From the NCBI RefSeq assembly GCF_022045235.1, contig NW_027266269.1, positions 38,998,001-39,062,000 on the forward strand: a stretch of DNA of 64,000 nucleotides, in the 5' to 3' direction. Shown here one piece after another: positions 2,271 to 46,789 of the stretch. The translations under genes and the position numbers were made by a program. A model generated the notes under the pieces. That model did no database searches, had not been told where the DNA came from, and saw nothing but the letters and a program-made list of their open reading frames with translations. This stretch comes from Haliotis cracherodii. Its lineage: Eukaryota. How positions within the stretch are numbered: position 1 is the first letter of the stretch; every line of letters begins with the position of its first letter.

Positions 2271-2309
2271 CATACCGAACCACTGACATACGAGTGCAAA
2301 CCTACTAAC

Positions 2310-2498
2310 CCCTGTCTTCACATGCAGTGGGACACATATCCTGACAGAAGAGGTTACGCTTGCATCCCTCGAGATGCACATAGCTGTATCCCAAGCTGCA
2401 ACACTTGGGCACTGCCACGAGGTTAGTGTCACACTCCCAGTATGCACGGCAGCTGCCCAGAAGGTTGAAGGTCGCAGTGTTGTTGTCCTTGCACTTGT
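2310..2498 (-). CDS. Exon: Pif-type second Cys-rich chitin-binding-like domain, (D)[62 protein letters not shown]
   Basis: Acceptor ttctctccacag|AC, donor AGG G|gttagt, 189 nt, phase 1-1; joins the previous exon as VVCPH-D-KC; not in ORF track. Confidence 0.88.
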
Positions 2499-5400
2499 CT
2501 GTGGAGAGAATGTGCTTGTGTTACAATACTGTGCTTAACATAGAAACATGTGGTGCTGTCGCCTTTGTCCTTGTTAAGGGGATCTTTCCAAACAGTCATA
2601 ACAACGGGACGAGATTTAACTGATCAACGCACATAGTTACGCTCTGGATTGGCCCCGTAAAGATCCGGGTAAGAAAAGGCTTTCAGGAACCCATGCTTGC
2701 TGTAAAGGGCGACTATGCTTGTCGAAAGAGGCGACTAACAGGATCGGGTGGTCAGACTCGCTGACTTGGTTGATGCATGTCATCGTATCCCAATTGCGTT
2801 GATCGATGTTCATGATGTCAATGGCCGCCGTCATATAGCTGGAATATTGCTGCGTGCGGCTTTAAACAACAACCATACTTCTGAGTGACTTTCTTGTTAT
2901 CTGTTAGTGTAACACTAAGGGAGCATCCTTGTACGGTGGTGCGGGGGATTTATATGAAAAAAGAAATTGCCAAGCTGTATCCAACAAACTATATATTTTC
3001 TGAGCACCATCAAACAACATATTCATTTGCACTATTAAAACAATAAGCATTTGTTTCACCATTGCCAACAAAGTAATCATTTTGTGCGTATTTCCGAACA
3101 AACTACTCACTAGAAAACTCTTCCAACCACCTTATAGAAATCAATGGATACTTCCTGACACTTTTAGGTTGTTTGAACGTCCTGAGAGAAGTGAGAACAT
3201 ATGCCTTTCTTTCTATGCTTGAGACTCTGTCCCAGGGAAGTCTCAACGTGGTACTGGACTGTATGCTTTCAACTGACCTGCTTTAAGATTTGAGAATACG
3301 CTTGCTTACCGTGTGGACACACAACCCTCCAGGAATCGTCACATTGGAATGTGACTTGGTTCCAGAATTTACCAAACGGACATCTCCTGTACATAGCAAC
3401 AACGTTGCCATTGGGGTTGTTGTAGCACTGGATGTACTTGTCGCAGTCAGTAGGGTGGTAGCGGTAGCCAATGCCGTCTCGATACGTCATTGACGTACAC
3501 AGACCTGTTGAAGAGACAATAAGTCCTAACATACATGTGTGCAATGAAAGATACTTATCCACTTATCAAGTGCGTCTTAATATACATGCATGCAATGATA
3601 GATACTTATCCACTTATCAAGTGCGTCTTAACATACATGCATGCAATACTAGACTCTTATCCACTTATCAAATGCGTCTTAACATACATGCATGCAATGA
3701 TAATTACTTATCCACTTATCAAATGCGTCTTTACATACATGCATGCATAATAGATTGATGGAGCACAGTCTCCTATAACAGTGGAAGTCCATACCCCCAC
3801 ATTCTGGGAAACTGCAAGGTGTTGATATTGTCTGCAAGACATCCCCGAAACAGCCGTTGCCTCCGTTACTTGGAGGGGGGTTTGTACACGACCTCGACCT
3901 CCTCCTGACCACACTCGGCCCCTGTCCGCACGTGACGCTACACGGAGGTCCTGTCCACTGCGTCCATTGCGTGAAACTGCCATTTACTGGAACTGAACAT
4001 GTGTAAGATGATTACGAGACATCCTTGCTTAATGTAAACTATCTTCACTGAAAAAGCAGTTTGAAGGCTATAGAAAGAGACAAAACATCAAAAAACGATG
4101 TCCATAAGGTTAAATTTGTTGGGTTTTATTGTTGTTTAACGCTGCACTCAGCATTATCCCAGCTATATGACGGCGGTTGGTCTGTAAATAATCGAATCTG
4201 GACCAGACAATCCAGTGAGTGATATCATGAGCATCGATCTACACGATTTTTGGATACGATGACATGCATTAACCAAGTCAAGCGAGTCTGACCACCCGAT
4301 CCCGATAGTCCGCTTACGACCACCATAGTCGCCACCTATGACAAGCATGGGTTGCTGAAGACCTATTCTAACCCGGATTTTCACGGGAACATAAGTTTCA
4401 GTAATAGTATTGGCATTAGGTCGTCGAAAGAATATCACATATCCTTTCTTAATGTAGAAACTTGGAATGTTTAAAGGCTTCTCAATGTCACGGGCCTTCG
4501 GTAGATAGTTATAAAATACCCTTCCGGAATACAGATTGTGATCTAAGAAAGCTACAAGCTATTAATATAGAAATTCGCTCTCGTGTACTGCCAGTTTTAT
4601 TTTAAATCGAGTCCGATACCAGAACTATACACGGGGTTTCATAGAATTGGTATTACACGAGAGCGAGTTTAGTTCTGTATTTATTACTTGCCGTTTATAA
4701 TGTCGTGTGTAATTGAGGCAGACATCTACGCGATGGAAAACATAACCTAAGTTTAACAGATTAATACTTTAAACACGTTGAACACCCATGAATTTGATAT
4801 CATACAGCCGCCCACCTTTAGCATTTAGGGGTCCGTTCCACAAAACTAAAGTAGCGATAAGGTTATCATATCTCCAACACATCCTGTGACGTAATATGTG
4901 AAATTGTGTTGCAAGATACACCAGCGATAGAATGCCTGTGACGTCATCCTAGCAGTAGGGATGCTGGGGGTCATCGAGTTTGCATAAGCTCCTCTCGAGG
5001 ATCTTTCATCCTCTACGCACATGTCATTGAATAAGCCCAGTGATGTTGAGAGTTTTCAATATTTGTTAGTGACACTAGACCCAGCGGTACATAAACACGC
5101 ACCTTGGTATTAAACACTAATGTAATAACAGCTTGATGTTATTAAACAGTGGTATCTTCAACGCGCGAGTAATAAACATAAATGATATATACCCTTCCGT
5201 GTAATCTAGCACAATCACAAATTTGAACATTAAATGAACATGAAACGTTCAATAGGTCATCAATGCTGAAACTGGAGAACGTTCTTACAAAATAATGATG
5301 AATAATGACAGAAGGTTGCTTGTTGTTCCTAGAAACTGAGCATATACAAGAGGTTGTCCGTACCGAGACAAGGGACGTTATCACATGTCTTCTTCACTAC

Positions 5401-8400
5401 CCCCAGCAGAGCTCCAGTACAGTTCAGACCGCCATTGCTGGGAGGTGGGTTTGTGCAGCTCCTGGTTCGAGTCCGAATCACACACGCGCTGCTGCAAGGG
5501 GGGTTGGTCCACTCGGTCCAGAGGGTCAGGCCACCATCCACTGGGGACAAAGATAAATAACATGCTCACATTATCCTGTCTTGCTTGAAACATCTCGCTA
5601 TGGTGGTATATTAAAGAAAGTTATATCCATATATTGTGTCTACTTGGGTCTTGCTTGAGAAGGGTATAAAGGTCTATCTGAAACATTGCTTTGATAGCAT
5701 ATTAAAGAAGTTGTTATGCATAAATTGTCTACTTTGTCACCCGCCAACTTCTATGTAATGCCTATCAAACATTTGAACTCCACACTGTCACAGTCGGTGT
5801 TACAGATTATGAACCGTATGTTGCTGATTTTGGCACACCAGCATCAATCTACGCACTTGGGGTCAACCAAATCAGCGACCCGGGCCACCCATCCCAAAAG
5901 TCACCTCTTACAACAAGCATGGGTTGATGAAGACCAATTCTAACCCGGATCTTCACGGTGGCTCATGCTTATAGTATGTTCTGTCAAATGCCATGAAACA
6001 CTATGAGTGAGAGAATATGGTTTTACGCAGCTTTTAGCAATATTCCAGTAATATCACGGAGGAGGACCCAAAAAATGGGATTCACACATTCTACCCATGT
6101 CTTCAGCGTGACGAGCGAACGCTTTAACCACAAGACTGCCCGACCTCCCCCGAAGCACTATGAAGCATCTGAAGCAAATGTGTTACATAATATGACGCAA
6201 TAACTCAACAAATACACACCTGGACAAGCACTGAAGACACACTGGGTACTCGATGTTTCAAGCGTGTTACCGAAGCATTGTTGTCCGCCGTTACTGGGAG
6301 CAGGGTTGGTGCAGCTTCTGGTTCGTGACCTGACACGGCTGTTGGTGGAGCCACAGGTGATGCCACAGGAAGGTGTAGTCCATTGAGTCCATTCGGTATA
6401 AGTGCCATTCACTGGATATATAATTATTTTGGTTTGTAAGTAATAAATATGGAGAAATTAAATATTTCAATTTACAAATACAGCAAACTACGGTTATAAC
6501 GAACTCAAAGGGACCACTAATTTTAGTTTGTCATAACCGTAGTTCGTTATAAGCATATATACAGCATATATACAACCAATGACCGGGACTAAAAATAAGT
6601 TTGTGATATCCGTTAGTTCGTTAGAAGCATGTTCGTAATAAACGTAGTTTAGTGTATATATATTAAAAGCTTCTTTTCAAATGTTTGCTAAATATTGTTT
6701 TACACCGCAGTAGCAGTTTCATATTTACAACTATTCATATTGAAAACTATTTTTCATAGCTTCATGCAAATAATCGTGTCTGGATCAAAGAAACCAGTGG
6801 TTGATACAATGAGCAATCTCACACAGCGTAACATTGCGATGACAATGTACCAAGACACTGACCATCTGATTTATTAAGAGGGTATTCCATCAAGCACAGG
6901 TTTCTCAGGACCAATTCAATACTTGGCTCCCCACGGGACAAGGTGTGGAAGACGCTACTTACCAACACAAGCGGGGAAGGAACAGGTTTGCTGTGTTATA
7001 TCCAGAAATGGACCGGTGCAGCCTTGTCCACCATTGCTGGGAGGAGGGTTGGTGCAGCTCCTGGTCCGTGTTCGTGTCAAGTCAGTTCTTGTTCCACAAC
7101 TGATGCCGCAAGGTGGATTGGTCCACTGTGTCCAGAGCGTGGGGCCACCGTTCACTAGACAATGACAAACATACTGCTTGCTTAGAAACGTTCAGAGTAT
7201 AATTGTGGGTCAGACCACAGTCCACTAGACAATGACAAACATGCTGCTTGCTTAGAAACGTTCAGAGTATAATTGTGGGTCAGGCCACCGTCCACAAGAC
7301 AATGACAAACATACTGCTTGCTTAGAAACGTTCTGAGTATAATTGTGGGTCAGGCCACCGTCCACTAGACAATGACAAACCTGCAGCTTGCTTAGAAACG
7401 TTCAGAGTATAATTGTTCTTAAATCTTCCACACATTCCAATAATATCACACCTGAGGTGAAGATGACACAAATTTATTAATTTAAAGTATTAAGTATGAC
7501 ACAGATGCCTCTGGCAGAAGCTGAAGATGTATGGTGCCACGAAACGCGTAAAGCATCCTGTGTGCTTTCAAAAATAACAAAGACATCCTCAAGATACTGT
7601 AGCGAATACAAAACGTCAGCGTCAGAGAAATACCACGCTCGTCAGAGAAATACCACGCTCGATTATCCGCCGATACTGATTTCATTGGAATTAAAAGGTT
7701 ACATACCGATGCACATTACATGTGAACGGATCACTGAAAATAAGTGATGACACCAGCCGCTCCCGAAATTGGTAATCGTGTCCCGAACTACTGCTTGTGC
7801 CCATCACTGACGCCACTTGCATAAAAAAGTTTGCTTTTGTTGTCGTACGCCACATGGGAATGAGGCACTTTTTATTCCCCTTTAAGTAAACAACAAGTCA
7901 AAAATATCACGTCGGACATTTTAATTAGACTAAAGACAGAAACACAAACCTTCCTTGCCACACTAACCAAATCCCCCAAAATGAAATATTTCTTTATATT
8001 CAACGAAAGTGAATAATTGACTACTTTCTGTTATAAATTGGATAATGGAAGTTCATTCTAATATTAGCAAAAGCAATCTCCTGACTGGAGCTCTGAGGAC
8101 GTCTTCGTCACACAACGAATAAATGTCAACTAAAAATGTTACTCCGTTCAACGTAGTGGTCTGCTACATCAGCATGACAAAAAAAAGAACATGCGCAACG
8201 GGTGTGTTTGGGCGAGCACTTCCATATTAATCGAGTGTATTTGGATGAGCTATACCAACCCAACCAAGAACAACTGTTTTCTTCTGTTATACCCCCTCCT
8301 TGACAGATTCCTGGCAACACAATACAAACAATATCAACACAATACTAACACTTCTAGCTTTTGCAATGAATTAAAATATAACTGTACCATACTTACAAAA

Positions 8401-15895: not shown

Positions 15896-15928
<33 letters not shown>

Positions 15929-36900: not shown

Positions 36901-39900
36901 CCACCCCAGACCATGATGGAACCACTACCATAACGGTCATGTTCACTGATGTTGGCATCATGGAAACGTTCACGTTGTCGTCGCCACACCCGCTGCCTCC
37001 TGTCTGTAAAGTCCAAACAATACCTGGACTCATCGGTGAACAGAACTGGAACCCAATCGTTCCGTGTCCAAGTGACATGATCTTCAGCCCATTCCAATCG
37101 CTCCCGCCGGTGTCGAACAGTCAGGGGGATTCGGACACATGCCCTTCTCGAGTAGAGACCTGCATTGTGAAGACGATTCCGTATCGTCTGAGTGGACACA
37201 TTCACCCCCGAGGCGTTCAGGAGGTCGTTACGTAGGCTGGTTGCTGTCCAGAAGGGATGACGTCGTGCCTGAAGAGCCACAAAATGATCTTGGCGTTGGG
37301 TTGTCGACCTCTGACGACCACCCCCATGTCGGTGTGCTGCTGTACCAAACTTTTGCAGTCGGGACCAGGCCCTGCTTACAACGCTCTGGCTGACGTTTAG
37401 TGCACTGGCAACGTCACGTTGTGAATAGCCAGCATCAAGCATTCCAATACATCTGCCCAGTTGTTCTGTCGTCAGGCGACGCCTTACACGTTGAGGGGGC
37501 ATTGCGTAGATAAACGTAGTGTAAACACTCAATTGAGTTTACAGTTTCAGAATGAATCAGACACCGTTGCCTGATTGGAAATCGTGCAATGGTAGCACAA
37601 GCATGAACTGTGATGTGAAACGCATTTCCCATGGCATGAAATGCACGTGCATGTGTGTTGGAGACGTTTTTGATTTCACTTGAACACAATATTGCCAGTT
37701 ATGCAGTTATTTTGTTTTTTTATTCAGAAAAATATCTACGATCCTTATCAAATTTTGAGTAGTATATATTGTCCATATATATATTGTCTAAATCCACACC
37801 TTAAGTCACACCCAAAGCTCCAATATAGTTAAGTACCATCACATTTTGTGTTGCATTAGTAGGTCGAGATGTTCTATATATACTCTGCCACAAATATCAT
37901 TTTAATGTTCACAGTCATATTCATGATTAAATGCTGTAATTGATGTGACAAGGATACATTCAGACATCAAATGTTCTTTTCAAATGTTGTACAAATATAT
38001 TGCCGACGTAAATAAGACGTTTCACTAGAACTTTACAAAGAGAAAACGAATTGTTATAATGAATTTACAATAATGGAAGTTTGCATTAAAAAAATCCAAT
38101 TCCTGTTGGGTGCATGCATCTTTCACACAATTATAATTAAACTTGCATTATTTCAATAATAAGATTTGTGTGAGAATCTTCTCCAGTAACAAAAGAAAAC
38201 AGCGAGAATACATGATCCTTTGGACCTTACCGGCACAGGGTGAGAATGAACATGTCTGGGCTAAAACCTCAACGAAAGGACCAGTGCAGAATTGTCCTCC
38301 GTTAGCTGGAGCAGGGTTGGTGCAGGTCCTGTCCCTTGTTCTGCTGACAGAGGCTCCCACCCCACACGTGATGCCACACCCGGGATTGGTCCACGTGGTC
38401 CACTGGGTCAGTCCACCATTCACTGGGGCTAACATCAAAGAGACATGACGATTCAAATGAATTCTATTTTTCATTAAGATACAGCTGTTATCTGCTATCT
38501 GGAGATTATCTGTTACGAATTGACAGTTTACTTACCTATCTTCAAATTCTCAGCTCATGAATTAAATGTAAGAACATGCATTACGAATGTACTGGCTATA
38601 ACTATAAAATCGCACAAAATACACGTAGACTACGAATATACGGGTTAGGTCAAATTAAGCTTGGATATCGAAGCACATAGTTTCATGTATAACGAATGTG
38701 CTGCTTGAATGTTCCGTGCTGCATATTTGTGCTGTATTTGATTTCAGACTGTATCTGTTTACGCAATATTTGTTACTTTTCTGCGGTATTCTAAGTCAGA
38801 TAGTACACGTATCATACATTCAATATCTAGCTTATCATAGTGTCACACATTAACGCCCAAATAGATGTTTACCTCGGCAGGCACTAAAGACACAAGGCTG
38901 AGACAACGTTTCAATTGTATTTCCAATGCATTGTTGTCCACCATTACTGGCTACGGGATTGGTGCAGCTTCTAGTTCGTGACCTGACAAGGCTGTTGGTG
39001 GAGCCACAGGTGATGCCACAGGAAGGGGTGGTCCATTGAGCCCATTGGGTGAATGCTCCGTTGACAGCGACTGGGAAAATTTCGTATTTTATATTGATTC
39101 CATTCAGCAGAACTAGCATTTACTGAAACTGTTGGACAACAGCCATGTCTCTACCACAGCAGTAAGATGTAAACAGTGTTTGGAGATAAGTGGTCTTAAA
39201 GTATAAATGAAATTTCATCTCAAACTGAACATAATTGTCAGATTATTTTCACAAATATATGATATATGTATGCAACATAAAATAACGAACAATACCCTTT
39301 ATGTTGTGATTGGTCATTTAATGTTATAACAGGCATAATCTTGTGAGGTATCTTATTACATCACTTACCAACACAAGGAGTGAAATCACAGCTTTTTGGT
39401 AAAATATCTATGATAGGACCGGAACAGGGTGTCCCTCCATTGCTGGGGGCAGGGTTGGTGCAGCTTCTGGTTCGTGTGCGTATTTCAGTCCTTCTTCCAC
39501 AGGTGATGCCGCACGGTGGGTTGGTCCACTGTGTCCACAGTGTGAAGCCGCCGTTCACTAGGAAGTACATGCAGAAGCTATTTACTACAAAGTTGGATTA
39601 CCTTTTCGTTGTAATACATGTACATATTACTCATACACCCGATACTTTCATATGACTATAGTTAATCTGCCATGCCACTACAATAATATGAAAGAATCGG
39701 GTTGTCCTTAACTTTGTTTTCATTGTAGATCTCCAATAATCAAGATGGTACATTTTACAATTTGTGAGTGAGTATGGTTTTATGCCGCTTTTAGCAATAT
39801 TCCAGCAATATCACGGCGGCGGACACCAGAAATGGGCTTCACACATTGTACCCATGTCAGGGATGGAATCCGAGTCTTCAGCGTGACGAGCGAACGCTCT

Positions 39901-42900
39901 TATCACTAGGCTACTCGACCACCCCAACTTTTCAAGGGAAATCATCTGATCTAACGATTTTCAAGAAAATAAGTAAATGCAAATATCGTTGGTCGAAACA
40001 GACGTCATGCGGAATTTGTGATTGATGATGAAATGATGATATTGGCCAAATCTATCACTGCGCTACCGTGCAACTGTAAATGATGCAACAAAGACAAAAA
40101 CCTTTCCATAATCATAAGAGTCATTAGAGTCCATTGTCTGACTCCCTACAGCCTAAGGATGTGATGAAAGTGATGATACAAGATGTTCGAGGGAGGATGC
40201 ACCCCATCCACGCCCCCTCACCTATGACAAGCATGTCTACTGAAATTAACTTGATTAATCTTACATTAGAAACTATGAATGAATAACGGGATACATTAGG
40301 AGGAGACCCAGCATCACCATTCACGAACTAACCAAAGCGCCAATCTTCAGCACACATGTCGTAAGAAGCTACTAACGGGATGTCATCGTATCTCAATTGA
40401 TTACATCGATGCTCATAATGCCAATCGCTGGATTGTTTGGACCAGACCCGATTATTTACAGACCGCCGTCATGGTCGATTGCTGAGTGCAGTGTTAAACA
40501 CAAACAAACAAACCTTGTGGAAAATCATTTAAAGAAGTTCTGTTTCTTTCTTTTTCAGTGAATATAATATACATTAAGTAAGGATGTTTCGTAATCTTTT
40601 ACGTTAAACACAAACAGACAAACGGAAAAACAAACAAACAAACAAACAAACAAACAAACCAACCAATGCAAGCAGCAAAGTCACAGTTTCTCGGTTCGAC
40701 CCCAACTAAAAGACCAGCGCAGCCTTGTCCACCATTGCTGGGAGGAGGGTTGGTGCAGCTCCTGGTCCGTGTTCGTGTCAAGTCAGTTCTTGTTCCACAA
40801 CTGATGCCGCAAGGTGGATTAGTCCACTGTGTCCAGAACGTCAGGCCACCGTCAACTAGACAATGACAAACATGTTGCTTGCTTACAATGGTTCTGTGTA
40901 TAACTTTGGGTCAGGCCACTGTCCAGCAGACAATGACAAACATGCTGCTTGCTTAGAAACGTTCTGTGTATAATTGTGGGTCAGGCCACCGTCCACTAGA
41001 CAATGACAAACATGCTGCTTGCTTAGAAACGTTCTGTGTATAATTGTGGGTCAGGCCACCGTCCACTAGACAATGACAAACATGTTGCTTGCTTAGAAAC
41101 GTTCTGTGTATAATTGTGGGTCAGGCCACCATCCACTAGACAATGACAAACATGTTGCTTGCTTAGAAACGTTCTGTGTATAATTGTGGGTCAGGCCACC
41201 ATCCACTATGCAAATAAGAAAAATGTTAATTATTATTTAAATCATGTGGATTACAGTACATTATCTGTTCCCCACTACCTGCTGACCAGCATCATGTTGC
41301 AGTGACATTGTCAAATTAGGATTATAATCCGAGATAGGAAACTTATAGGTCCATCTGTGTAGTGAGTGAGTGAGTATGGTTTTACGCCGCTTTTAGCAAT
41401 ATTCCAGCAATATCACGGCGGGGGACACCAGAAATGGGCTCCAGACATTGTACCCACGTCGGGAATCGAACCCGGGTCTTTGGCGTGACGAGCTAACGCT
41501 TTAACCACTAGGCTACCCGACGGCCCCCCATCTGTGTAATATGTATGCTTTGGTGTATGCTCTGCCGAATCTGTAAGTATATCGTAATGATTTAATATAT
41601 GCTATGCTCCTTATGTATAAAAGTAAAAGCAATTCGAGAGTACAGTCCAATATACTTAAATCGAATACAACACACAACACTGAATACGTTCCCCAACATG
41701 TTTCATTGTTATCAGTGAGTGAGTGAGTTGGGTTTAACATCCAGCGTGCAATTGATAGAAATAATGTTTTTCCACTATTTTCTGTAACAAGAAGTGTCAA
41801 GTGGTTTGTACCTAAGAAATACACAAACTCACCCGGGCACGCTGGGAAGACACACGTCTTGACAAATGTTTCAACACTATCCCCGGAGCACTGCAGGCCG
41901 CCATTAGTGGGGATGGGGTCGGTGCAGCTTCTTGTCCTTGACCTAAACACACTGCTGGAGGAGCCACAGGTGATGCCACAGGAAGGGTTAGTCCACTGCG
42001 TCCACTGAGTGAATCCTCCATTGACAGGGACTGGAAATATATTTATTGACGTATGAAAGGGCTTTGTTATTGCATGGACGATTAAGATAAAGAAAGCTAC
42101 ATCCAAATATAGCACTCAATAGAGGTTAAGGAACACCCGATATTTCATATGACTATACTTAATGTTTCATGGCCATAGTCATATGAACATATCTGTGTTC
42201 TTGAACTTTTGAATACAGTAAACTACGGTTATAACAAACATGCTCATAACAAACTAACGGATATATCGAACTTATTTTTTTGTCCCGACTATTTGCTGTA
42301 GTTATGCTGTATATATGCTTATAACGAACTACAGTTATAACGTACTAAAACTAGTAGTCCCAAAAAGTTCCCCCCGCAGTAAACTGATAAGTCCTGATAT
42401 AACAAAATACTGTTCAGATGGACGGAACACACAGCAAACGCACTACTACAGCGGCATTTAGTCCAACACTCTCGCTCAACGTACCGACACACGAAGCTTT
42501 AACTTCAACGAAGGGTTCGGTGCAGTTCAGTCCGCCATTACGGGGGGCAGGGTTGGTGCAGCTTCTGGTTCTGGTTCTAACCACATCGTTCTTAGCTCCA
42601 CAGGTCAAGTTACAAGGTGGTCCACTCCACTGGGACCATGGCGTCAAACCACCATTCACTGTCGACAATATACACAAATATCAACTCACCTTAACTGTCG
42701 ACATTGCACACAAATATCAAGCCGACGCCCACTGTCGACAGTATACACAATTACTAAGATCTCGTTTATGTATTTTATATGCCAATTCGTGTGAGAGCAA
42801 AATACACAAGCATTGACATAGACACTACAAACACATATCCGATACCTATTTAAATGATACTATTTATTTATGTAGTATATAATTTAGTACCAAATTGTAT

Positions 42901-45900
42901 AGAATCGAATAAAACTAAATACTGATTGGCAAGTTCAAATGTCTCGGTCACTTGGTTGATTATGTGTCATAAACACCAGATGGCTTTGGGTGTGGTTCAT
43001 GGTATCGATCACTGGTTTATCGACTCAACTTTTCACAGACCTGTCATACAGCAGGAATATTGCTGCAGCGTATTAGTTAGGCTATAAACAATAATCAAAC
43101 AAAGAAAAACTGTGTAAGCAGCCAGTGCATAACGGTGCATCGTACCAACACATGCGGGGAAGAAACAGGTTTTCTGCAAAATCTCCACCAAAGACCCCGT
43201 GCAGTCACGTCCTCCATTGCTGGGGAGTGGATTGGAACAGCTCCTGGTACGTGTCCGCATGACATCTGATCGTTGTCCACACGTGATGCCACATGATGGA
43301 TCGGTCCACTGAGTCCAAGCTGTTAGTCCACCATTCACTGATGAAAGACCACATTTACATCATGAAACCAGCAAACTGATTAACTTTATTGTTGAAGAAA
43401 CACACATGTCCTGCAATTTATGTTCAGGATGTAAACGAGACAAGTAGATTTTCCACATATAAAAGATACATTCCATAGTGTTTAGTTCCCTTCACATTCT
43501 ACATCAACAACAGGAGCGGTGGGATAATGTAGTTCTTAACGCTCGACTCGCCACAGGAGAGGTGGAAATCCTTGTAAGGCGGAGCTCACCACAGGAGAGG
43601 TGGGATAACTTGGTAAGGCGAGGCACGCCAAAGGAGAGGTGGGAAAAACTTGTAAGGCGGGGCTCGCCACAGGGGAGGTGGGAAAACCTTGTTAGGCGAG
43701 GCTAGCCACAGGGGAGGTGGGATAACCTGGTAAGGCGAGACTCACCACAGGAGAGATGGTATAACCTAGTAAGGCGAGACTCACCACAGGAGAGGTGGGA
43801 TAACCTTGTTAAGTGAGGCTTGCCACTTGAGAGATGGGGTAACATGGTAAAGCGAGACTCACCACAAGAGAGGTGGGATAATCTAGTAAGGCGGGGAATA
43901 AGTAATGTAACACTCATTGATAGGAAACCATTGATTAAGATAACTTTGGAAAATGAATGACGCCAATGAGATAAAAATAAATACATACTCAAGAAAATGT
44001 GAGTTGACGAAAATAATAATATTTGATTAATGAAAGGATAAAGAGAAGAGAATGAAATAATATCGACCTTGACCCTAACAGGTTACACTAAAACACTCAC
44101 CTCGACAAGCAGGGAAGCTACACGTCTTGACAGACGTCTGCACTACATCCCCAAAACATGGCAGTCCGCCATTACTGGGAACAGGGTTTGTGCAGCTTCT
44201 GGTTCGTGACCTGATGACACCGTCGGTGGAGCCACAGGTGATGCCACAGGAAGGGTCAGTCCATTCAGACCACAGGGAAAGCCCGCCGTTTACAGGTCCT
44301 GTAATGCGTTTTGAAGAACTGTAAACCATGTCAGGTATTTGTATACCATGTCAGGTCTTTGTATACCATGTCAGGTCTTTGTATACCATGTCAGGTCTTT
44401 GTATACCATGTCAGGTCTTTGTATACCATGTCAGGTCTTTGTATACCATGTCACTAAATCAGTAGATATTAATCACGGTCTTTATTGCAACATATCGATG
44501 TTTGTGTTAACACTTCAACAGATACTACCGTCATTGTACAAAACATCACCACGAGTCTTGGTAACCATTGTACAAACAAGCTTAAAGGGGAACTAGGTTA
44601 GCATGCTTAAATGGGGACTAGGTACGTTGGTAAACACCTTATAAACATTCTTACAGGGGAACTTGGCACTTTATTACCCATATTATTGACATGCTTAAAT
44701 GGGATTTTGGTACTTTCGTAGCCATGTTGTAAAGACGATGAAAGGGGAACCAGTTTAACATGCTTAAAGGGGGACCTGAGCAATTTGGCAGCCCAACAAG
44801 ATTCATATCGTTGTAAAACCACACTTTGTTAGTCTGCTAACGGACTTTATATTATTTGTGCAATTAAAGATTACCTTAATTACACAAATACAATGGCCAA
44901 GTTTCACACCAATTACAACGTCTCCCCTAGTCTCCACTAGTCTCGCCCTTGACTCCCCCGGTCTCCCCTATTCTCCACTGGACTCCCCTAGTCTCCCCTG
45001 GACGCCCCTAGCCTCCCATAGTCTCCCCTAGTCTCACCCTTGACTCCCCTGGTCTCCCATGGTATCCCCTGTTCACCCCTTGACTCCCCTGGCCTCCCCT
45101 GGCCTCCCCCTTCACTCCCATGGTCTCCCTCTGGAATCCCCTAGTCTCCCCTGCCTCCCCTTGACTCCCCCTGGAATCCCCTACTCTTCCCTGACTCCCC
45201 TGGTCTCCACTAGTCTTCCATGGTCTCCCCTGGTCTCCACTAGTCTCCCCTGGCCTCCCCTAGTCTCCCCCTTGACTCCCATGGTCTCCCTCTGGAATCC
45301 CCTAGTCTCCCCCTTGACTCCCATGGTCTCCCCCTGGAATCCCCTAGTCTCCCCCTTGACTCCCATGGTCTCCCCTGGAATCCCCTACTCTTCCCAGACT
45401 CCCCTGGTCTCCCCTAGTCTTCCCTGGTCTCCCCTAGTCTCCCCTGGTCTCCCCTGGTCTCCCCTAGTCTTCCCTGGTCTCCCCTAGTCTCCGCTGGTCT
45501 CCCCTAGTCTTCCCTGACTCCCCTGGTCTCCCCTACTCTCCCCTAGTCTCCACTACTCTTCCCTGACTCCCCTGGTCTTCCCTGGCCTCCCCTACACTTC
45601 CCTGACCTCCCCTAGTCTTCTCTGACTCCCCTGGTCTCCCCTAGTCTTCCCTGACTCCCCTGGAATCCCCTAGTCTCCCCTGGCCTCCCCTACTCTTCCC
45701 TGACTCCCCTGGTCTTCCCTGACTCCCCTGGAATCCCCTAGTCTCCCCTGGTCTCCCCTAGTCTTCCCTGACCCCCCTGGTCTCCCCTAGTCTTCCCTGA
45801 CTCCCCTAGTCTCCCCTGGCCTCCCCTAGTCTCCCCCTTGACTCCCTCTGGAATCCCCTAGTCTCCCCTTGACTCCCATGGTCTCCCTCTGGAATCCCCT

Positions 45901-46155
45901 AGTCTCCCCTGGTCTCCTCTAGTCTCCCCTGGACTCCCCTAGTCTCCCCTGGCCTCCCCTGGTCTCTCTGGTCGTACCTACCCACGCAAGCAGACATAAC
46001 TTCCACAAACGACCCAGTACAGTTGAGTCCTTCATTGCTGGGAGGTGGGTTGGAGCAGCTTCTTGTTCGCGTCCGCATCACATCCGTTCTTGTTTCGCAA
46101 GCAACGCCACAAGGTAGACCAGTCCAGTCGGTCCACTGCGAGAATCCACCATTGA
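2310..46155 (-). CDS. Spliced gene span: Pif/BMSP-like chitin-binding extracellular protein with 33 tandem TSR (TSP1) domains followed by two chitin-binding-type domains; continues beyond left edge; 5' end unresolved
   Basis: 35 open, GT-AG flanked, phase 1-1 exons read by hand on the minus strand; they join in one frame with no stops. Confidence 0.9.
2654..2872 (+). mobile_element. SINE family A copy (cccgtgaagatccggg...gctggaatattgctg...aaacaa tail)
   Basis: Matches about ten other copies in the window. Confidence 0.8.
3310..3504 (-). CDS. Exon: chitin-binding type-2 (peritrophin-A/CBM14) domain, [64 protein letters not shown]
   Basis: Six-Cys spacing with HPxDCxKYxxC and CPxGxxW motifs; caacag|GT acceptor, G|gtaag donor; 195 nt. 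Confidence 0.93.
3526..3750. repeat. 51-bp tandem repeat, ~4.4 copies
   Basis: taacatacatgcatgcaatgatagatacttatccacttatcaagtgcgtct repeated. Confidence 0.9.
3795..3986 (-). CDS. TSR exon 33 ([21 protein letters not shown]...CSFPECG); alternative in-frame acceptor at 3992
   Basis: WxxW, CxxTCG, RxRxC, 6 Cys; GT-AG, phase 1-1. Confidence 0.9.
4118..4387 (-). mobile_element. SINE family A copy
   Basis: Similarity to other copies. Confidence 0.8.
5364..5540 (-). CDS. TSR exon 32 (shortened loop, CSSAC)
   Basis: 177 nt, cag|TG acceptor, G|gtacg donor. Confidence 0.9.
6003..6150 (-). mobile_element. SINE family B (tRNA-derived head, TCAC-type tail), degenerate
   Basis: Similar to 41362-41528. 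Confidence 0.7.
6220..6411 (-). CDS. TSR exon 31
   Basis: 192 nt, GT-AG, TSR motifs. Confidence 0.92.
6481..6654. mobile_element. Tc1/mariner-type (pogo-like) MITE with TA TSD; second copy near 42216-42365
   Basis: ta|cagcaaactacggttataacgaac ... gttcgtaataaacgtagtttagtg|ta inverted ends. Confidence 0.7.
6963..7154 (-). CDS. TSR exon 30
   Basis: 192 nt, ctag|TG, G|gtaag. Confidence 0.92.
7155..7416. repeat. 70-bp tandem repeat that copies the exon-30 splice acceptor plus its first codons
   Basis: Units at 7154, 7224, 7294, 7364. Confidence 0.9.
7855..12305 (-). mobile_element. BEL/Pao LTR retrotransposon, degenerate; 3' LTR 7855-8289, truncated 5' LTR 11931-12305
   Basis: ~370-bp direct repeats; CCACA TSD at 7850-7854 and 12306-12310; PPT AGGAGGGGG; RT YMDD, Pao RNase H (SIPRLEL, FWSDS), integrase ([22 protein letters not shown]), C-terminal WPLGRI motif. 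Confidence 0.93.
8607..11929 (-). pseudogene. Frameshifted BEL/Pao pol (RT-RH-IN) with a short gag N-terminal remnant
   Basis: Motif-bearing ORF fragments in several frames. Confidence 0.9.
12571..12768 (-). CDS. TSR exon 29
   Basis: 198 nt, tttacag|CT, G|gtgag. Confidence 0.92.
13092..13286 (-). CDS. TSR exon 28
   Basis: 195 nt, GT-AG. Confidence 0.9.
14255..14512 (+). mobile_element. SINE family A copy
   Basis: Similarity to other copies. Confidence 0.8.
14876..15067 (-). CDS. TSR exon 27
   Basis: 192 nt, tttccag|TT, G|gtaag. Confidence 0.92.
15221..15282. repeat. Interstitial telomere-like (CCCTAA/CCCTA)n tract
   Basis: Seen directly. Confidence 0.85.
15308..15499 (-). CDS. TSR exon 26
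   Basis: 192 nt, GT-AG. Confidence 0.92.
15984..16175 (-). CDS. TSR exon 25 (alternative in-frame acceptor at 16181)
   Basis: 192/198 nt, GT-AG. Confidence 0.9.
16305..16460. repeat. ~51-bp tandem repeat x3
   Basis: aaaacagagcaaccattaacgtctatgtggaaatatactgacacacaat repeated. Confidence 0.9.
17088..17279 (-). CDS. TSR exon 24
   Basis: 192 nt, GT-AG. Confidence 0.92.
17535..17690 (-). mobile_element. Penelope-like element terminal fragment with hammerhead-like motif (17568-17607)
   Basis: CAC-CTGATGA-A-GGAGTA...TACTCC-aAAAC-GTT-GTG; homologous to 31710-31845. Confidence 0.65.
18246..18443 (-). CDS. TSR exon 23 (PRFGG class)
   Basis: 198 nt, hand-translated open; not in minus-strand ORF track. 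Confidence 0.92.
18510..18702 (+). mobile_element. SINE family A copy, 5' truncated
   Basis: Similarity to other copies. Confidence 0.75.
18753..18944 (-). CDS. TSR exon 22
   Basis: 192 nt, A|gtaag donor. Confidence 0.92.
19088..24277 (-). mobile_element. DIRS-type tyrosine-recombinase retrotransposon, near full length, degenerate ORFs
   Basis: ~150-bp ITRs (19095-19249 / 24123-24276); RT AYLHVPI and YLDD; RNase H SDNSTT..YINKQG.TRS; methyltransferase-like YAFPP; [20 protein letters not shown]; ICR-like segment 19335-19365. Confidence 0.92.
24577..24768 (-). CDS. TSR exon 21
   Basis: 192 nt, GT-AG. Confidence 0.92.
24999..25202 (-). CDS. TSR exon 20 (PRFGG class) using a newly formed acceptor
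   Basis: ttttgtag|GT GGG CAA AGC ATA AAT GGA in frame; 204 nt. Confidence 0.8.
25472..25663 (-). CDS. TSR exon 19 (chimeric)
   Basis: 192 nt, GT-AG. Confidence 0.92.
25956..26153 (-). CDS. TSR exon 18 (PRFGG class)
   Basis: 198 nt, ttttcag|TT. Confidence 0.92.
26455..26646 (-). CDS. TSR exon 17
   Basis: 192 nt, GT-AG. Confidence 0.92.
27151..27342 (-). CDS. TSR exon 16
   Basis: 192 nt, GT-AG. Confidence 0.92.
27599..27796 (-). CDS. TSR exon 15 (PRFGG class)
   Basis: 198 nt, hand-translated open; not in ORF track. Confidence 0.92.
28056..28305 (-). mobile_element. SINE family A copy split by the Harbinger insertion (resumes at ~31682)
   Basis: Consensus ttctaccc..gatcttcac is interrupted at 28305/31682. 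Confidence 0.8.
28503..31182. mobile_element. Truncated copy of the non-autonomous piggyBac-like element seen at 50658-55271
   Basis: Collinear similarity over ~2.7 kb. Confidence 0.85.
31200..31485 (-). pseudogene. HARBI1-like transposase N-terminal fragment with internal stop
   Basis: [24 protein letters not shown]...[24 protein letters not shown]. Confidence 0.75.
31776..31815 (+). ncRNA. Penelope-associated minimal type-I hammerhead ribozyme-like motif
   Basis: CAC CTGATGA A GGA-loop-TCC GAAAC GTT GTG: core intact, stem I CAC/GTG, palindromic stem III. Confidence 0.6.
32282..32473 (-). CDS. TSR exon 14
   Basis: 192 nt, GT-AG. Confidence 0.92.
32804..33455. mobile_element. Kolobok-like MITE
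   Basis: ctaa|agggcaagttcacacg ... cgtgtacacttcccct|ttaa. Confidence 0.65.
33615..33806 (-). CDS. TSR exon 13
   Basis: 192 nt, GT-AG. Confidence 0.92.
35061..35252 (-). CDS. TSR exon 12
   Basis: 192 nt, GT-AG. Confidence 0.92.
35583..35774 (-). CDS. TSR exon 11
   Basis: 192 nt, GT-AG. Confidence 0.92.
36055..36246 (-). CDS. TSR exon 10
   Basis: 192 nt, hand-translated open; not in minus-strand ORF track. Confidence 0.92.
36276..37764 (-). mobile_element. Tc1 DNA transposon
   Basis: Perfect TIR tactactcaaaatttgataaggatc; TA TSD on both sides. Confidence 0.95.
36539..37502 (-). pseudogene. Tc1 transposase with an internal deletion/frameshift removing the second catalytic Asp segment
   Basis: [18 protein letters not shown], then frame change to [13 protein letters not shown]. 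Confidence 0.9.
38231..38422 (-). CDS. TSR exon 9 (alternative in-frame acceptor at 38428)
   Basis: 192/198 nt, GT-AG. Confidence 0.9.
38873..39070 (-). CDS. TSR exon 8
   Basis: 198 nt, GT-AG. Confidence 0.92.
39369..39557 (-). CDS. TSR exon 7
   Basis: 189 nt, GT-AG. Confidence 0.92.
39764..39926 (-). mobile_element. SINE family B copy
   Basis: Similar to 41362-41528; absent from the paralogous intron at ~33990. Confidence 0.8.
40664..40855 (-). CDS. TSR exon 6
   Basis: 192 nt, ctag|TT, G|gttgg. Confidence 0.9.
40856..41208. repeat. 70-bp acceptor-containing tandem repeat (same family as 7155-7416), ~5 copies
   Basis: Units at 40855, ~40925, 40995, 41065, 41135, 41205. Confidence 0.9.
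41362..41528 (-). mobile_element. SINE family B, full length (tRNA-derived head with A/B boxes)
   Basis: Minus strand: tagcctagtggttaaagcgtt...gggttcgattccc; TCAC-repeat tail. Confidence 0.85.
41833..42030 (-). CDS. TSR exon 5
   Basis: 198 nt, GT-AG. Confidence 0.92.
42485..42658 (-). CDS. TSR exon 4 (short, 5 Cys)
   Basis: 174 nt, ends EVKASCV G|gtacg. Confidence 0.85.
43146..43337 (-). CDS. TSR exon 3
   Basis: 192 nt, GT-AG. Confidence 0.92.
43510..43895. repeat. ~39-bp minisatellite (ccacaggagaggtgggataacctggtaaggcgagactca) x~10
   Basis: Seen directly. Confidence 0.9.
44101..44298 (-). CDS. TSR exon 2
   Basis: 198 nt, ttacag|GA, G|gtgag. Confidence 0.92.
44321..44453. repeat. 20-bp tandem repeat (gtataccatgtcaggtcttt) x~6.5
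   Basis: Seen directly. Confidence 0.95.
44920..45972. repeat. ~10-bp C-rich minisatellite (gtctccccta/g); G-run rich on the transcribed strand
   Basis: Seen directly. Confidence 0.95.
45982..46155 (-). CDS. TSR exon 1 (short, 5 Cys)
   Basis: 174 nt, ends EVMSACV G|gtagg. Confidence 0.85.
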
Positions 46156-46255: not shown

Positions 46256-46530
46256 TTGTTTGTTTGTTTGTTTGTTTGTTGTTTAACGTCGCACTCAGCA
46301 ATATTACAGCTATATGACGGCGGTCTGTAAATAATCGAGTCTGGATCACACAATCCAGAGATTGACATCATGAGCATCGATCCATGCAATTGGGATCGAT
46401 GACATGCATCAACCAAGTCAGCGAGCCTGATCACCCGATCCCGTTAGTCGCCTTTTACGACAAGCATGGTCACCTTTTACGGCAAGCTTGGGTTGCTGAA
46501 GACCTATTCTATCCCGGAATCTTCACGGGT
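46256..46530 (-). mobile_element. SINE family A copy abutting the truncated Ig exon
   Basis: Full-length match to other copies. Confidence 0.85.
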
Positions 46531-46618
46531 CGAGTCTGAGATAGGGTGGCCTGTAGTGTGACAGTGCCCCCAGTATTGATTGTCTGGGGGGTTAGTCCAC
46601 TCACAACACTTACGGCTC
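46531..46618 (-). pseudogene. Truncated Ig exon paralog (AVSVVSGLTPQTINTGGTVTLQATLSQT)
   Basis: Nucleotide similarity to 56005-56070; intact tttttaag acceptor; remainder missing beyond the SINE. Confidence 0.8.
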
Positions 46619-46789
46619 CTTAAAAATAATGGAATAATGATATAAACAATTAAATACTTCATCTTGAAAACGTAGCAATAAAGGTTTACCATTATATAGC
46701 TATCTAAAAACTGGCTGTAATAATATAACATAAAATACCTAATTTTACAAAATATGGCAATAAGGATACCAACATTGAATGCCTTTTGT

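What the first reader, a model, noticed from the sequence alone, without database searches (positions are those of the whole stretch)
2310..46155. Giant Pif-like chitin-binding protein with a 33-TSR rod upstream of the chitin-binding domains
Seen: 33 intact TSR exons (~2,110 aa) splice in frame into ChtBD2 plus a second Cys-rich domain (CPHDKC...CRAYWEC...PKCC...GC...C.D.CP). Known: this ChtBD tandem characterises molluscan Pif/BMSP-like shell-matrix proteins, which usually carry vWA domains upstream and a LamG/ConA-like domain downstream. Inference: here a very long TSR array (possibly headed by an Ig) occupies the upstream position. At ~5 nm per TSR this would be a rod over 100 nm long anchored to chitin, a candidate spacer or tether in shell, radula or periostracum matrix. 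No stop or frameshift was seen in any exon despite heavy TE load in the introns.
Basis: partly seen in the sequence, partly recalled or inferred. Interest (0 to 1): 0.85.

Follow-up and report, generated by a model that had tools for sequence, protein, structure and literature searches.

The report
Abalone TSR-array protein with Pif-type tail
This is a real, expressed black-abalone gene, already in RefSeq as "SCO-spondin-like", that encodes a secreted 2,513-residue protein made of 33 thrombospondin repeats followed by the chitin-binding and lectin-like tail typical of Pif shell proteins; it is a new domain combination, its tissue and function are untested, and it is not a new kind of system.

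Summary
On the minus strand there are 33 open TSR exons, all phase 1-1, at 46155-3795. They splice in frame to a CBM14 exon (3504-3310) and a second Cys-rich exon (2498-2309).

The window is Haliotis cracherodii. Every exon matches RefSeq XP_071098977.1 ("SCO-spondin-like", 2,513 aa). RNA contigs from two runs join TSR31-32-33 to both chitin-binding exons and run on past them.

The gene continues left of the window, across a 2.2-kb satellite.

The 371-aa tail aligns end to end with VWA-bearing "protein PIF-like" sequences (E 1e-84 to 9e-48), so "Pif-like tail" holds. The protein has no VWA domain, no Pif80-type acidic region and no working Ig exon; only two broken Ig remnants are left. The tandem paralogue 31 kb away has six Ig domains.

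Large proteins with this tail were found only in Haliotis. They carry mixed Ig, TSR and VWA arrays.

A shell-matrix role is untested, and a published abalone shell proteome shows no such protein. I rate this a new variant of a known kind, of moderate interest.

The parts
56119..56187 (-). First coding exon: ATG and signal peptide (residues 1-23), donor in phase 1
   Evidence: Exact match to P0039 residues 1-23; sequence read
55808..56074 (-). Ig I-set exon remnant: 3' part with its donor but no usable acceptor, starting 45 nt after the signal-peptide donor; skipped in the RefSeq model
   Evidence: 87-89% identical to the Ig repeats of the paralogue product P0038; sequence
46530..46619 (-). Ig exon remnant: acceptor plus the first ~30 codons, then cut off by a repeat insertion
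   Evidence: 73-77% identical to P0038 Ig repeats; sequence
45982..46155 (-). TSR exon 1 (five Cys, short C-terminal end)
   Evidence: Phase 1-1; equals P0039 25-81
44101..44298 (-). TSR exon 2
   Evidence: Phase 1-1; P0039 83-147; Pfam TSP_1 E 2e-6
43146..43337 (-). TSR exon 3
   Evidence: P0039 149-211
42485..42658 (-). TSR exon 4 (five Cys, short C-terminal end)
   Evidence: P0039 213-269; TSP_1 E 4e-6
41833..42030 (-). TSR exon 5
   Evidence: P0039 271-335
40664..40855 (-). TSR exon 6
   Evidence: P0039 337-399
39369..39557 (-). TSR exon 7
   Evidence: P0039 401-462
38873..39070 (-). TSR exon 8
   Evidence: P0039 464-528
38231..38428 (-). TSR exon 9 (RefSeq acceptor lies 6 nt upstream of my first call)
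   Evidence: P0039 530-594
36055..36246 (-). TSR exon 10
   Evidence: P0039 596-658
35583..35774 (-). TSR exon 11
   Evidence: P0039 660-722
35061..35252 (-). TSR exon 12
   Evidence: P0039 724-786
33615..33806 (-). TSR exon 13
   Evidence: P0039 788-850
32282..32473 (-). TSR exon 14
   Evidence: P0039 852-914
27599..27796 (-). TSR exon 15
   Evidence: P0039 916-980
27151..27342 (-). TSR exon 16
   Evidence: P0039 982-1044
26455..26646 (-). TSR exon 17
   Evidence: P0039 1046-1108
25956..26153 (-). TSR exon 18
   Evidence: P0039 1110-1174; TSP_1 E 1e-4
25472..25663 (-). TSR exon 19 (part of a two-TSR block that the paralogue lacks)
   Evidence: P0039 1176-1238
24999..25202 (-). TSR exon 20 (unusual upstream acceptor that adds GQS)
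   Evidence: P0039 1240-1306
24577..24768 (-). TSR exon 21
   Evidence: P0039 1308-1370
18753..18944 (-). TSR exon 22
   Evidence: P0039 1372-1434
18246..18443 (-). TSR exon 23
   Evidence: P0039 1436-1500
17088..17279 (-). TSR exon 24
   Evidence: P0039 1502-1564
15984..16181 (-). TSR exon 25 (weak donor G|gtattt; RefSeq acceptor 6 nt upstream of my first call)
   Evidence: P0039 1566-1630; TSP_1 E 1e-8
15308..15499 (-). TSR exon 26
   Evidence: P0039 1632-1694
14876..15067 (-). TSR exon 27
   Evidence: P0039 1696-1758
13092..13286 (-). TSR exon 28
   Evidence: P0039 1760-1823
12571..12768 (-). TSR exon 29
   Evidence: P0039 1825-1889
6963..7154 (-). TSR exon 30
   Evidence: P0039 1891-1953; RNA contig X1 record 3 joins it to TSR31
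6220..6411 (-). TSR exon 31
   Evidence: P0039 1955-2017; RNA joint 5540|6220 in runs X1 and X3
5364..5540 (-). TSR exon 32 (5-residue loop deletion, six Cys kept)
   Evidence: P0039 2019-2076; TSP_1 E 2e-4; in RNA contig X3 record 21
3795..3992 (-). TSR exon 33
   Evidence: P0039 2078-2142; RNA pieces 3793-3992 in X1 and X3; TSP_1 E 1e-7
3310..3504 (-). Chitin-binding exon 1: CBM_14 / peritrophin-A (ChtBD2), six Cys
   Evidence: Pfam CBM_14 E 1e-8; P0039 2144-2207; in the spliced RNA contigs of X1 and X3
2309..2498 (-). Chitin-binding-like exon 2 (divergent CBM14); spliced onward at G|gttagt and not ended at the in-frame TAG three codons later
   Evidence: No Pfam hit. HMMER hits to the same unit of PIF-like proteins. 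RNA joint 2498|3310, and contigs that leave the genome exactly at 2310
24..2272 (.). Satellite of ~42-bp units (about 56 copies) filling the intron between chitin-binding-like exon 2 and the next exon left of the window
   Evidence: only ~400 bp long in the paralogue

Best explanation
The finding is the Haliotis cracherodii gene behind RefSeq XP_071098977.1 ('SCO-spondin-like'). It has 41 coding exons on the minus strand. They run from the ATG at window 56187 to a stop about 3.8 kb left of the window.

The product is a secreted protein of about 264 kDa. It has a signal peptide, then 33 back-to-back thrombospondin type-1 repeats with 0-4 linker residues between them. It ends in a 371-residue Pif/BMSP-type tail: one CBM14 unit, two divergent CBM14-like Cys-rich units and a ConA-like/LamG jelly roll.

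Shown: the gene structure, the splicing of its 3' part, the domain identities, homology of the tail to Pif-like proteins, and purifying selection.

Inferred: the tail anchors the protein to chitin, and perhaps to another glycan through the lectin-like domain. The TSR array extends up to roughly 150 nm as a spacer or cross-linker. It offers repeated W/R-ladder surfaces, which in other TSR proteins bind sulfated glycans and matrix partners. The protein would then tie a chitinous extracellular matrix to other matrix or cell-surface components.

The tissue is unknown. I lean towards a chitin-containing epithelial or cuticular matrix over the mineralised shell.
For: Gene identity:
- All exon peptides are exact, ordered substrings of P0039 = XP_071098977.1.

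Expression and splicing:
- RNA contig X1 (0 mismatches) joins 3992-3793 | 3502-3310 | 2498-2310 and has 507 nt more beyond 2310.
- RNA contig X3 joins TSR31-32-33-CBM14-CBM14-like.

Domains and tail:
- Pfam finds only TSP_1 (E 6e-79) and CBM_14.
- Tail residues 2143-2513 align end to end with VWA-bearing PIF-like proteins: Gigantopelta 36.6% identity, E 1e-84; Saccostrea E 9e-48.
- The tail groups inside a gastropod clade with the Gigantopelta PIF-like protein (support 96/95).
- An AF2 model of a tail-only homologue has pLDDT 83.8 and pTM 0.83. Its Foldseek hits are dominated by ConA-like jelly rolls such as legume lectins.
- Weak Laminin_G_2 or Laminin_G_3 Pfam hits fall at the same position in four relatives. 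ESM Atlas neighbours are Laminin_G_3 clusters.

Selection:
- Against the tandem paralogue, exons are about 95.6% identical, with dS 0.088, dN 0.034 and dN/dS 0.38. Collinear introns are about 85-88% identical.
- The H. rufescens orthologue is collinear and 95.3% identical in protein.

Secretion and shape:
- There is a hydrophobic N-terminal signal, 33 WxxW and 33 RxRxR motifs, and no furin-type site.

Context:
- In H. iris, chitin-binding 'SCO-spondin-like' genes are up in pigmented foot epithelium that also stains for chitin (PMC13544226).
Against: Chitin binding was not tested for this protein. The second and third Cys-rich units and the ConA-like domain get no Pfam hit in this protein itself.

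The fold evidence comes from a homologue only 37.7% identical (P0023), and the TM-scores are modest (0.45-0.52 on the target).

The tissue of the two RNA runs is unknown because the ids are coded. The signal-peptide-to-TSR1 junction rests on the RefSeq model only.

The rod length and stiffness are extrapolated from general knowledge of TSR dimensions, not computed here. The H. iris genes were not shown to be orthologues of this one.
Confidence: 0.62

Rival explanations
1. It is a true shell-matrix framework protein that does the job of Pif/BMSP. It would be secreted by the mantle, anchored to the chitin sheets of nacre or the prismatic layer, with the TSR array acting as an interlamellar spacer.
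For: The tail is homologous to Pif-like proteins over its whole length. Pif/BMSP proteins with VWA, CB and LG domains are shell-matrix proteins, and a subfamily with long CCP arrays in front of the CB domains is found in shells (PMC11291548). The H. laevigata shell holds low-abundance 'IG, chitin-bd_II' and 'chitin-bd_II (2x); ConA_like' proteins, which may be relatives.
Against: There is no VWA domain and no acidic aragonite-binding Pif80-type region; the protein ends right after the ConA-like domain. A search of the H. laevigata shell proteome tables found TSP1 only in unrelated entries: one with fibrinogen, a CUB metalloprotease and a peroxidase. None also has chitin-binding domains. The only expression lead for chitin-binding SCO-spondin-like genes in abalone is pigmented foot epithelium.
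Confidence: 0.2
2. It is a soluble immune or mucosal pattern-recognition protein. The tail would bind the chitin of fungi, parasites or food particles, and the TSR array would bind microbes or host cells. This is comparable to the Ig plus chitin-binding VCBPs of protochordates, or to TSR-rich mucus and adhesive proteins.
For: The family is expanded and diversified within Haliotis with swapped Ig and TSR arrays, a pattern often seen in immune-type gene families. Unspecified 'SCO-spondin-like' proteins rise in abalone haemocytes after Vibrio challenge (PMC11250055). TSP1-repeat and chitin-binding proteins occur in limpet pedal mucus, though as separate proteins (PMC7333891).
Against: The proteins in those papers are not tied to this gene. 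dN/dS of 0.38 shows constraint, not the diversifying selection typical of recognition molecules. The closest relatives of the tail are matrix proteins.
Confidence: 0.12
3. Gene A is a young, degenerating duplicate of the Ig-bearing neighbour, or an over-extended automated model, and makes no functional full-length protein.
For: It has lost its Ig exons and keeps two broken remnants. Its tail nests inside the clade of the Ig-bearing paralogue. Two TSRs have an odd number of Cys. All the exons are symmetrical, so many could be skipped without notice; a RefSeq isoform in H. rufescens skips two.
Against: All 41 exons are open with usable splice sites. The same Ig-less 2,512-aa gene is kept in H. 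rufescens at 95.3% identity. Exons are better conserved than introns, and dN/dS is 0.38. Spliced RNA contigs exist in two runs. The five-Cys TSRs are shared with the paralogue.
Confidence: 0.05

Closest known systems
Pif / BMSP family of molluscan shell-matrix proteins (Pinctada Pif 97/80, Mytilus BMSP; classification of Shimizu et al. 2024, PMC11291548)
   Same: The C-terminal order is the same: CBM_14, then CBM_14-like units, then a laminin-G/ConA-like domain. The 371-aa tail aligns end to end with RefSeq 'protein PIF-like' sequences that carry VWA.
   Different: There is no VWA domain, which is the domain used to define the family. There is no acidic Pif80-type region and no dibasic cleavage site. 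The upstream position is filled by 33 TSRs. Presence in shell is not shown.
[quoted passage not shown]
   Same: A long array of small disulfide-rich repeats sits directly upstream of the CB-LG tail.
   Different: The repeats here are TSRs, not CCPs. VWA is absent. The lineage is Haliotis, not bivalves.
SCO-spondin (the source of the RefSeq name)
   Same: A long run of TSRs in a large secreted protein.
   Different: None of the vWD, C8, TIL, LDLrA or CTCK domains of SCO-spondin is present; Pfam finds only TSP_1 and CBM_14. The name reflects TSR similarity only.
Haliotis paralogues with the same tail ('hemicentin-1-like', 'obscurin-like', 'SCO-spondin-like', uncharacterised; for example XP_071098978.1, the tandem neighbour)
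   Same: The tail is the same, at 37-95% identity. The building blocks are the same: Ig I-set, TSR, and sometimes VWA.
   Different: This gene, with its H. rufescens orthologue, is the form with TSRs only: no Ig, no VWA, and two more TSRs than the neighbour.
VCBPs of amphioxus and Ciona (Ig V domains plus a chitin-binding domain)
   Same: A recognition or adhesion array is fused to a C-terminal chitin-binding domain. This comparison is from general knowledge and was not tested here.
   Different: VCBPs are small, carry Ig rather than TSR domains, have no LamG-like domain, and come from a different phylum. No sequence relationship was tested.

Membership tests
Pif/BMSP family | N-terminal VWA domain falling in the Pif/BMSP VWA clade (the criterion of PMC11291548) | tested here: not met
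   Pfam scan of the full product finds only TSP_1 and CBM_14. Relatives P0010, P0026, P0028 and P0034 do have VWA.
Pif/BMSP family | CBM_14 (peritrophin-A) domain downstream, followed by CBM_14-like units | tested here: met
   CBM_14 at E 1e-8 on the exon at 3504-3310. The second unit is homologous to that of PIF-like proteins and is scored as a second CBM_14 stretch in relatives P0023 and P0026. A third Cys-rich unit lies left of the window.
Pif/BMSP family | Laminin-G / ConA-like domain after the chitin-binding units | tested here: met
   Exons left of the window encode it. The AF2 model of homologue P0023 gives hits dominated by ConA-like jelly rolls. Laminin_G_2 or Laminin_G_3 hits, all below Pfam's cut-off, fall at the same position in P0026, P0031, P0014 and P0011. 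There is no direct Pfam hit in this protein itself.
Pif/BMSP family | Acidic, low-complexity CaCO3-binding region (Pif 80) released at a dibasic site | tested here: not met
   The protein ends right after the ConA-like domain, and no R-x-K/R-R site is present.
Pif/BMSP family | Presence in the shell organic matrix | tested here: inconclusive
   The text and tables of the H. laevigata shell proteome show no TSP1 plus chitin-binding entry. That is a different species with a fragmentary transcriptome database, and no proteome of this species was available.
Thrombospondin type-1 repeat (TSR) proteins | Repeats of about 60 residues with WxxW, an RxRxR ladder and six Cys | tested here: met
   33 repeats; Pfam TSP_1 at E 6e-79; 33 WxxW motifs in the repeats (a 34th lies in the tail) and 33 RxRxR motifs; 31 of 33 repeats have six Cys.
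SCO-spondin | vWD, C8, TIL, LDLrA and CTCK domains together with TSRs | tested here: not met
   None of these domains was found by Pfam.
CBM14 / peritrophin-A chitin-binding domain | Six-Cys spacing CX13-20CX5-6CX9-19CX10-14CX4-14C with conserved aromatic residues (consensus from general knowledge) | tested here: met
   Spacing of 17, 5, 14, 12 and 7 residues, with Y, F and W between the Cys, read directly from the exon at 3504-3310; Pfam hit. Chitin binding itself cannot be tested with these tools.

The most novel reading that the evidence does not exclude
Abalones (Haliotis) carry a lineage-specific radiation in which the Pif/BMSP chitin-binding/LamG tail has been coupled to interchangeable giant Ig and TSR arrays, with or without VWA. 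This gene is the extreme TSR-only form. Its chitin-anchored filament of about 150 nm would organise a non-shell chitinous matrix, for example the melanin-bearing foot or epipodial epidermis, rather than nacre. That would extend the Pif toolkit beyond biomineralisation.
Probability: 0.3. Interest if true: 0.6.

Novelty: new variant of a known kind. Interest (0 to 1): 0.4.

Why it matters
Pif/BMSP proteins are the best-studied link between chitin and mineral in mollusc shells, and the family is defined by its VWA domain. This gene shows that the family's chitin-binding/LamG tail also works as a separate module.

In abalones the tail has been joined to very long TSR and Ig arrays, and this gene has no VWA at all. 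This suggests that domain shuffling on a conserved chitin anchor produces new matrix proteins. It also warns that names such as "SCO-spondin-like", "hemicentin-like" and "obscurin-like" in mollusc annotations hide a single family.

If the protein is an extended chitin-anchored tether, it is a tractable candidate for measuring how spacing is set in chitinous matrices. The practical value is modest until tissue and binding data exist.

Tried and rejected
- **Word-indexed protein search with the Gigantopelta PIF-like protein.** It returned only the query. The same search with the Saccostrea tail returned bivalve PIF-like proteins but not Pinctada Pif itself. So the link to canonical Pif rests on RefSeq names and on the published domain scheme, not on a direct alignment.
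- **Pfam on the second Cys-rich exon, the third Cys-rich exon and the ConA-like exon of this gene, up to E = 10.** No hits. Their identity rests on homologues and on a fold model.
- **Runs X19 and X20.** They turned out to be unspliced DNA of related abalones and say nothing about expression. Their huge depths at 2618-2945, 4094-4421 and 5898-6717 are interspersed repeats.
- **ORFs of 180 aa or more in the introns.** Only one, a Tc1/mariner transposase remnant, has a family hit.
- **Reading the exon at 2498-2309 as the last coding exon, ending at the TAG at 2307-2305.** Rejected. RNA contigs leave the genome at 2310, and the RefSeq protein continues.
- **The 2.2-kb satellite at 24-2272 as coding low-complexity sequence.** Rejected. 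It is intronic and is only about 400 bp long in the paralogue.
- **ESM Atlas with the full product.** I repeated it with the tail of the H. rubra orthologue, and treat the result as a lead only.
- **Searching a self-joined spliced model.** Left out. Exons were searched one by one by reference, and whole-protein work used the RefSeq sequence that the tools returned (P0039).
- **Botulinum and tetanus neurotoxin binding domains among the Foldseek hits.** They share only the common ConA-like jelly roll. Nothing suggests a toxin.

Full report
**Where the window is.** The window is G000 contig 6, 38,998,001-39,062,000. The contig length, 40,864,218, equals that of the contig carrying two RefSeq proteins of Haliotis cracherodii (black abalone): XP_071098977.1 and XP_071098978.1. 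All exon peptides of the finding are exact substrings of the first one. The organism and the gene are therefore identified.

**Checking the observation.** A six-frame motif scan found 33 minus-strand open segments with the TSR signature between 46155 and 3795, and none elsewhere in the window.
- Each has an AG acceptor just before the V/I-N/D-G-G start and a GT donor just after the last Cys-x-G.
- All 33 exons are phase 1-1, with lengths divisible by three, mostly 192 or 198 nt.
- Of eight sampled exons, six hit Pfam TSP_1 above threshold, one was sub-threshold and TSR1 gave no hit. The whole protein scores E 6e-79.
- Thirty-one repeats have six Cys. TSR1 and TSR4 lack a short C-terminal segment and have five. 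TSR32 has a short loop deletion. All three features are shared with the paralogue, so they are not recent damage.

The next exon, 3504-3310, is in the same phase and is a CBM_14/peritrophin-A domain (E 1e-8). The exon at 2498-2309 follows in phase and encodes a second Cys-rich unit without a Pfam hit.

**Transcripts.** Of the runs found for 2290-7200, two proved to be RNA when laid on the stretch.
- Contig 1 of run X1 has no mismatches. It joins 3992-3793, 3502-3310 and 2498-2310, and carries 507 further bases beyond 2310.
- Other X1 contigs join TSR32 to TSR31 and TSR31 to TSR30.
- Contig 21 of run X3 (a close relative, about 98% identical) joins TSR31, TSR32, TSR33 and both chitin-binding exons.
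- The joints have GT..AG ends on the minus strand.

The contigs also leave the genome exactly at the donor G|gttagt at 2309/2310. They do not run on into the TAG three codons later, so the gene continues. Runs X19 and X20 are unspliced DNA of related species.

**The rest of the gene.** I fetched the flanks. The 2.2 kb to the left, window 24-2272, is a satellite of ~42-bp units. Beyond it lie five more exons that match the RefSeq protein exactly:

| Exon | Position | Content |
|---|---|---|
| X | L004 9934-9791 | third Cys-rich unit |
| Y | L004 9318-8969 | beta-rich |
| Z1 | about window -1819 to -1923 | |
| Z2 | about window -3166 to -3258 | |
| Z3 | about window -3731 to -3769 | followed by the stop |

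Upstream, the signal-peptide exon is at 56187-56119. The gene therefore spans about 60 kb with 41 coding exons and encodes 2,513 residues. The mature protein is about 264 kDa with pI 8.6. It has 0-4 residues between repeats and no furin-type site.

**The Ig question.** The tandem neighbour runs from window ~87,850 to ~153,700, also on the minus strand, and encodes XP_071098978.1 (2,932 aa). That protein has six Ig I-set domains, then 31 TSRs, then the same tail. The gene in the window keeps only two Ig fragments:
- a 3' part at 56074-55808, which starts 45 nt after the signal-peptide donor and has no workable acceptor;
- a 5' part at 46619-46530, which is cut off by a repeat insertion.

The RefSeq model splices the signal peptide directly to TSR1. 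The H. rufescens orthologue (2,512 aa, 95.3% identical, collinear) does the same. So this gene is the Ig-less, TSR-only form.

**Is it under selection?** The two tandem genes are collinear over exons and introns.
- Exons are about 95.6% identical: dS 0.088, dN 0.034 and dN/dS 0.38 over 7.3 kb.
- Aligned introns are about 85-88% identical.

With the conserved orthologue and the RNA contigs, this argues against a decaying duplicate. Gene A has two more TSRs than gene B (residues 1167-1298). A RefSeq isoform in H. rufescens skips a two-TSR block at about the same place. That fits the cassette-like behaviour expected of symmetrical exons.

**What the tail is.** A full HMMER search of 1.8 billion representatives with the second Cys-rich exon gave 37 hits. 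In most long hits the match is followed by about 240 further residues. Named members include 'protein PIF-like' of Gigantopelta, Littorina, Saccostrea and Octopus. They also include many Haliotis proteins called SCO-spondin-like, hemicentin-1-like or obscurin-like.
- The 371-residue tail of this gene aligns end to end with the VWA-bearing PIF-like proteins: Gigantopelta at 36.6% identity and E 1e-84, Saccostrea at E 9e-48.
- The C-terminal ~200 residues have no Pfam hit in this protein. The equivalent region gives weak Laminin_G_3 or Laminin_G_2 hits in four relatives.
- An AlphaFold2 model of a tail-only homologue (P0023, 37.7% identical; pLDDT 83.8, pTM 0.83) has three small beta-rich units followed by a large beta sandwich.
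- Its Foldseek matches are dominated by ConA-like jelly rolls: legume lectins, a lectin-like domain of an arabinanase, and the lectin-like subdomain of clostridial neurotoxin binding domains. These share only the fold.
- ESM Atlas neighbours are Laminin_G_3 clusters, which I treat as a lead only.

**Comparison with the literature.** Shimizu et al. 2024 (PMC11291548) define the Pif/BMSP family by a clade of VWA domains. They describe the usual downstream order as CBM_14, CBM_14-like 1, CBM_14-like 2 and laminin G, which is the order seen here.
- They describe a bivalve subfamily (PifCCP) with many CCP repeats between VWA and CB.
- Their main text has no mention of TSR or Ig forms, and they did not sample Haliotis.
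- By their criterion this protein cannot be placed in the family, because it has no VWA. It also lacks a Pif80-type acidic region.

It carries the family's tail and probably shares its chitin-anchoring mode, but it is not a Pif. The RefSeq name SCO-spondin-like is also misleading, because none of SCO-spondin's vWD, C8, TIL, LDLrA or CTCK domains is present.

**The family in abalones.** A search restricted to the tail found 16 proteins of 1,469-4,191 residues, all from Haliotis rufescens, rubra, asinina or cracherodii. They combine Ig I-set, TSP_1 and often VWA with CBM_14. In a maximum-likelihood tree of the tail (39 rows, 371 columns):
- all Haliotis members, with Gigantopelta and Littorina PIF-like, form a gastropod clade (96/95);
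- bivalve PIF-like proteins lie outside it;
- within Haliotis, VWA-bearing and VWA-less proteins are interleaved;
- this gene pairs with its H. rufescens orthologue (100/99), inside the clade of the Ig-plus-TSR neighbour.

The simplest reading is a recent tandem duplication followed by loss of the Ig exons. It would fall after the split from the H. rubra/H. asinina lineage and before the split of H. cracherodii from H. rufescens. The tree has no outgroup lacking the LamG-like domain and has several long branches, so deep relationships are not secure.

**How it most likely works.** The following are shown: it is a secreted protein with an uninterrupted TSR array and a chitin-binding/lectin-like tail, it is conserved and it is transcribed. 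The following are inferred:
- The CBM14 unit has canonical Cys spacing and aromatic residues, so it should bind chitin. The ConA-like domain may bind another glycan or protein.
- The 33 TSRs, at roughly 4.5-5.5 nm each (general knowledge of TSR crystal structures), would reach about 150-180 nm if extended. They would present repeated Trp/Arg ladder surfaces, which in other TSR proteins bind sulfated glycans and matrix proteins.
- The two five-Cys repeats near the N-terminus leave two unpaired Cys that could form inter-chain disulfides.

Where it acts is open. The H. laevigata shell proteome lists 'IG, chitin-bd_II' and 'chitin-bd_II (2x); ConA_like' proteins at low abundance, but no TSP1 plus chitin-binding entry. 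A 2026 H. iris study reports chitin-binding 'SCO-spondin-like' genes up-regulated in pigmented foot epithelium that also stains for chitin (PMC13544226); orthology with this gene is not shown. I therefore rank a chitinous epithelial or cuticular matrix somewhat above the mineralised shell, and an immune or mucosal recognition role below both.

**Verdict.**
- It is wrong on the Ig head for this gene, and untested on location and mechanics.
- The architecture already exists as automated RefSeq models in four abalone species.
- My searches of the paper library found no description of TSR arrays on a Pif tail.
- I rate it a new variant of a known kind, interest 0.4.

Noticed in passing
window 24-2272: A satellite of ~42-bp units (about 56 copies, with higher-order periods of 116 and 158 bp) fills the intron after the second chitin-binding exon. 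The same intron in the tandem paralogue holds only about 400 bp of it, so the array expanded about fivefold after the duplication.
   Followed up: partly
window 7143-7416 and 40840-41208: Tandem repeats of 70 bp (3.9 and 5.3 copies, 93-94% matches) start inside the 5' ends of TSR exons 30 and 6 and run into the upstream intron. Each copy repeats the acceptor site and the first bases of the exon, giving several tandem pseudo-acceptors. A similar threefold repeat of the acceptor 'tttctgacag' precedes the ConA-like exon at L004 9320-9460.
   Followed up: no
G000:C6 about 39,085,850-39,151,700 (window coordinates ~87,850-153,700; loci L008-L015): A tandem paralogue on the same strand encodes XP_071098978.1: six Ig I-set domains, 31 TSRs and the same tail. 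Some of its Ig and TSR exons are identical copies of one another, which points to very recent exon duplication or conversion.
   Followed up: partly
window 45982-46155 and 42485-42658: TSR1 and TSR4 each lack one of the last two Cys, leaving two unpaired Cys near the N-terminus. The feature is conserved in the paralogue and could serve inter-chain disulfide bonding.
   Followed up: no
window 36789-37532 (-): A Tc1/mariner-type transposase remnant (HTH_Tnp_Tc3_2, E 5e-19) lies in the intron between TSR9 and TSR10.
   Followed up: partly
window 2654-2878, 4094-4421, 5898-6717 and other places: A SINE-like interspersed repeat has many copies across the genome (71 matches reported, a lower bound). 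It gives enormous contig depth in every run that was laid. Its translation shows the recurring ...[18 protein letters not shown]... string.
   Followed up: no
window 44920-45966: A microsatellite-like array of 10-bp units (GTCTCCCCTG, about 104 copies) lies in the intron between TSR1 and TSR2. It accounts for the strong GC and AT skew there.
   Followed up: no
window 19000-24000: A GC-rich block (about 51% GC against about 41% around it) in the 5.6-kb intron between TSR21 and TSR22 holds three ORFs of ~183 aa with no Pfam hit. It is probably a repeat element.
   Followed up: partly
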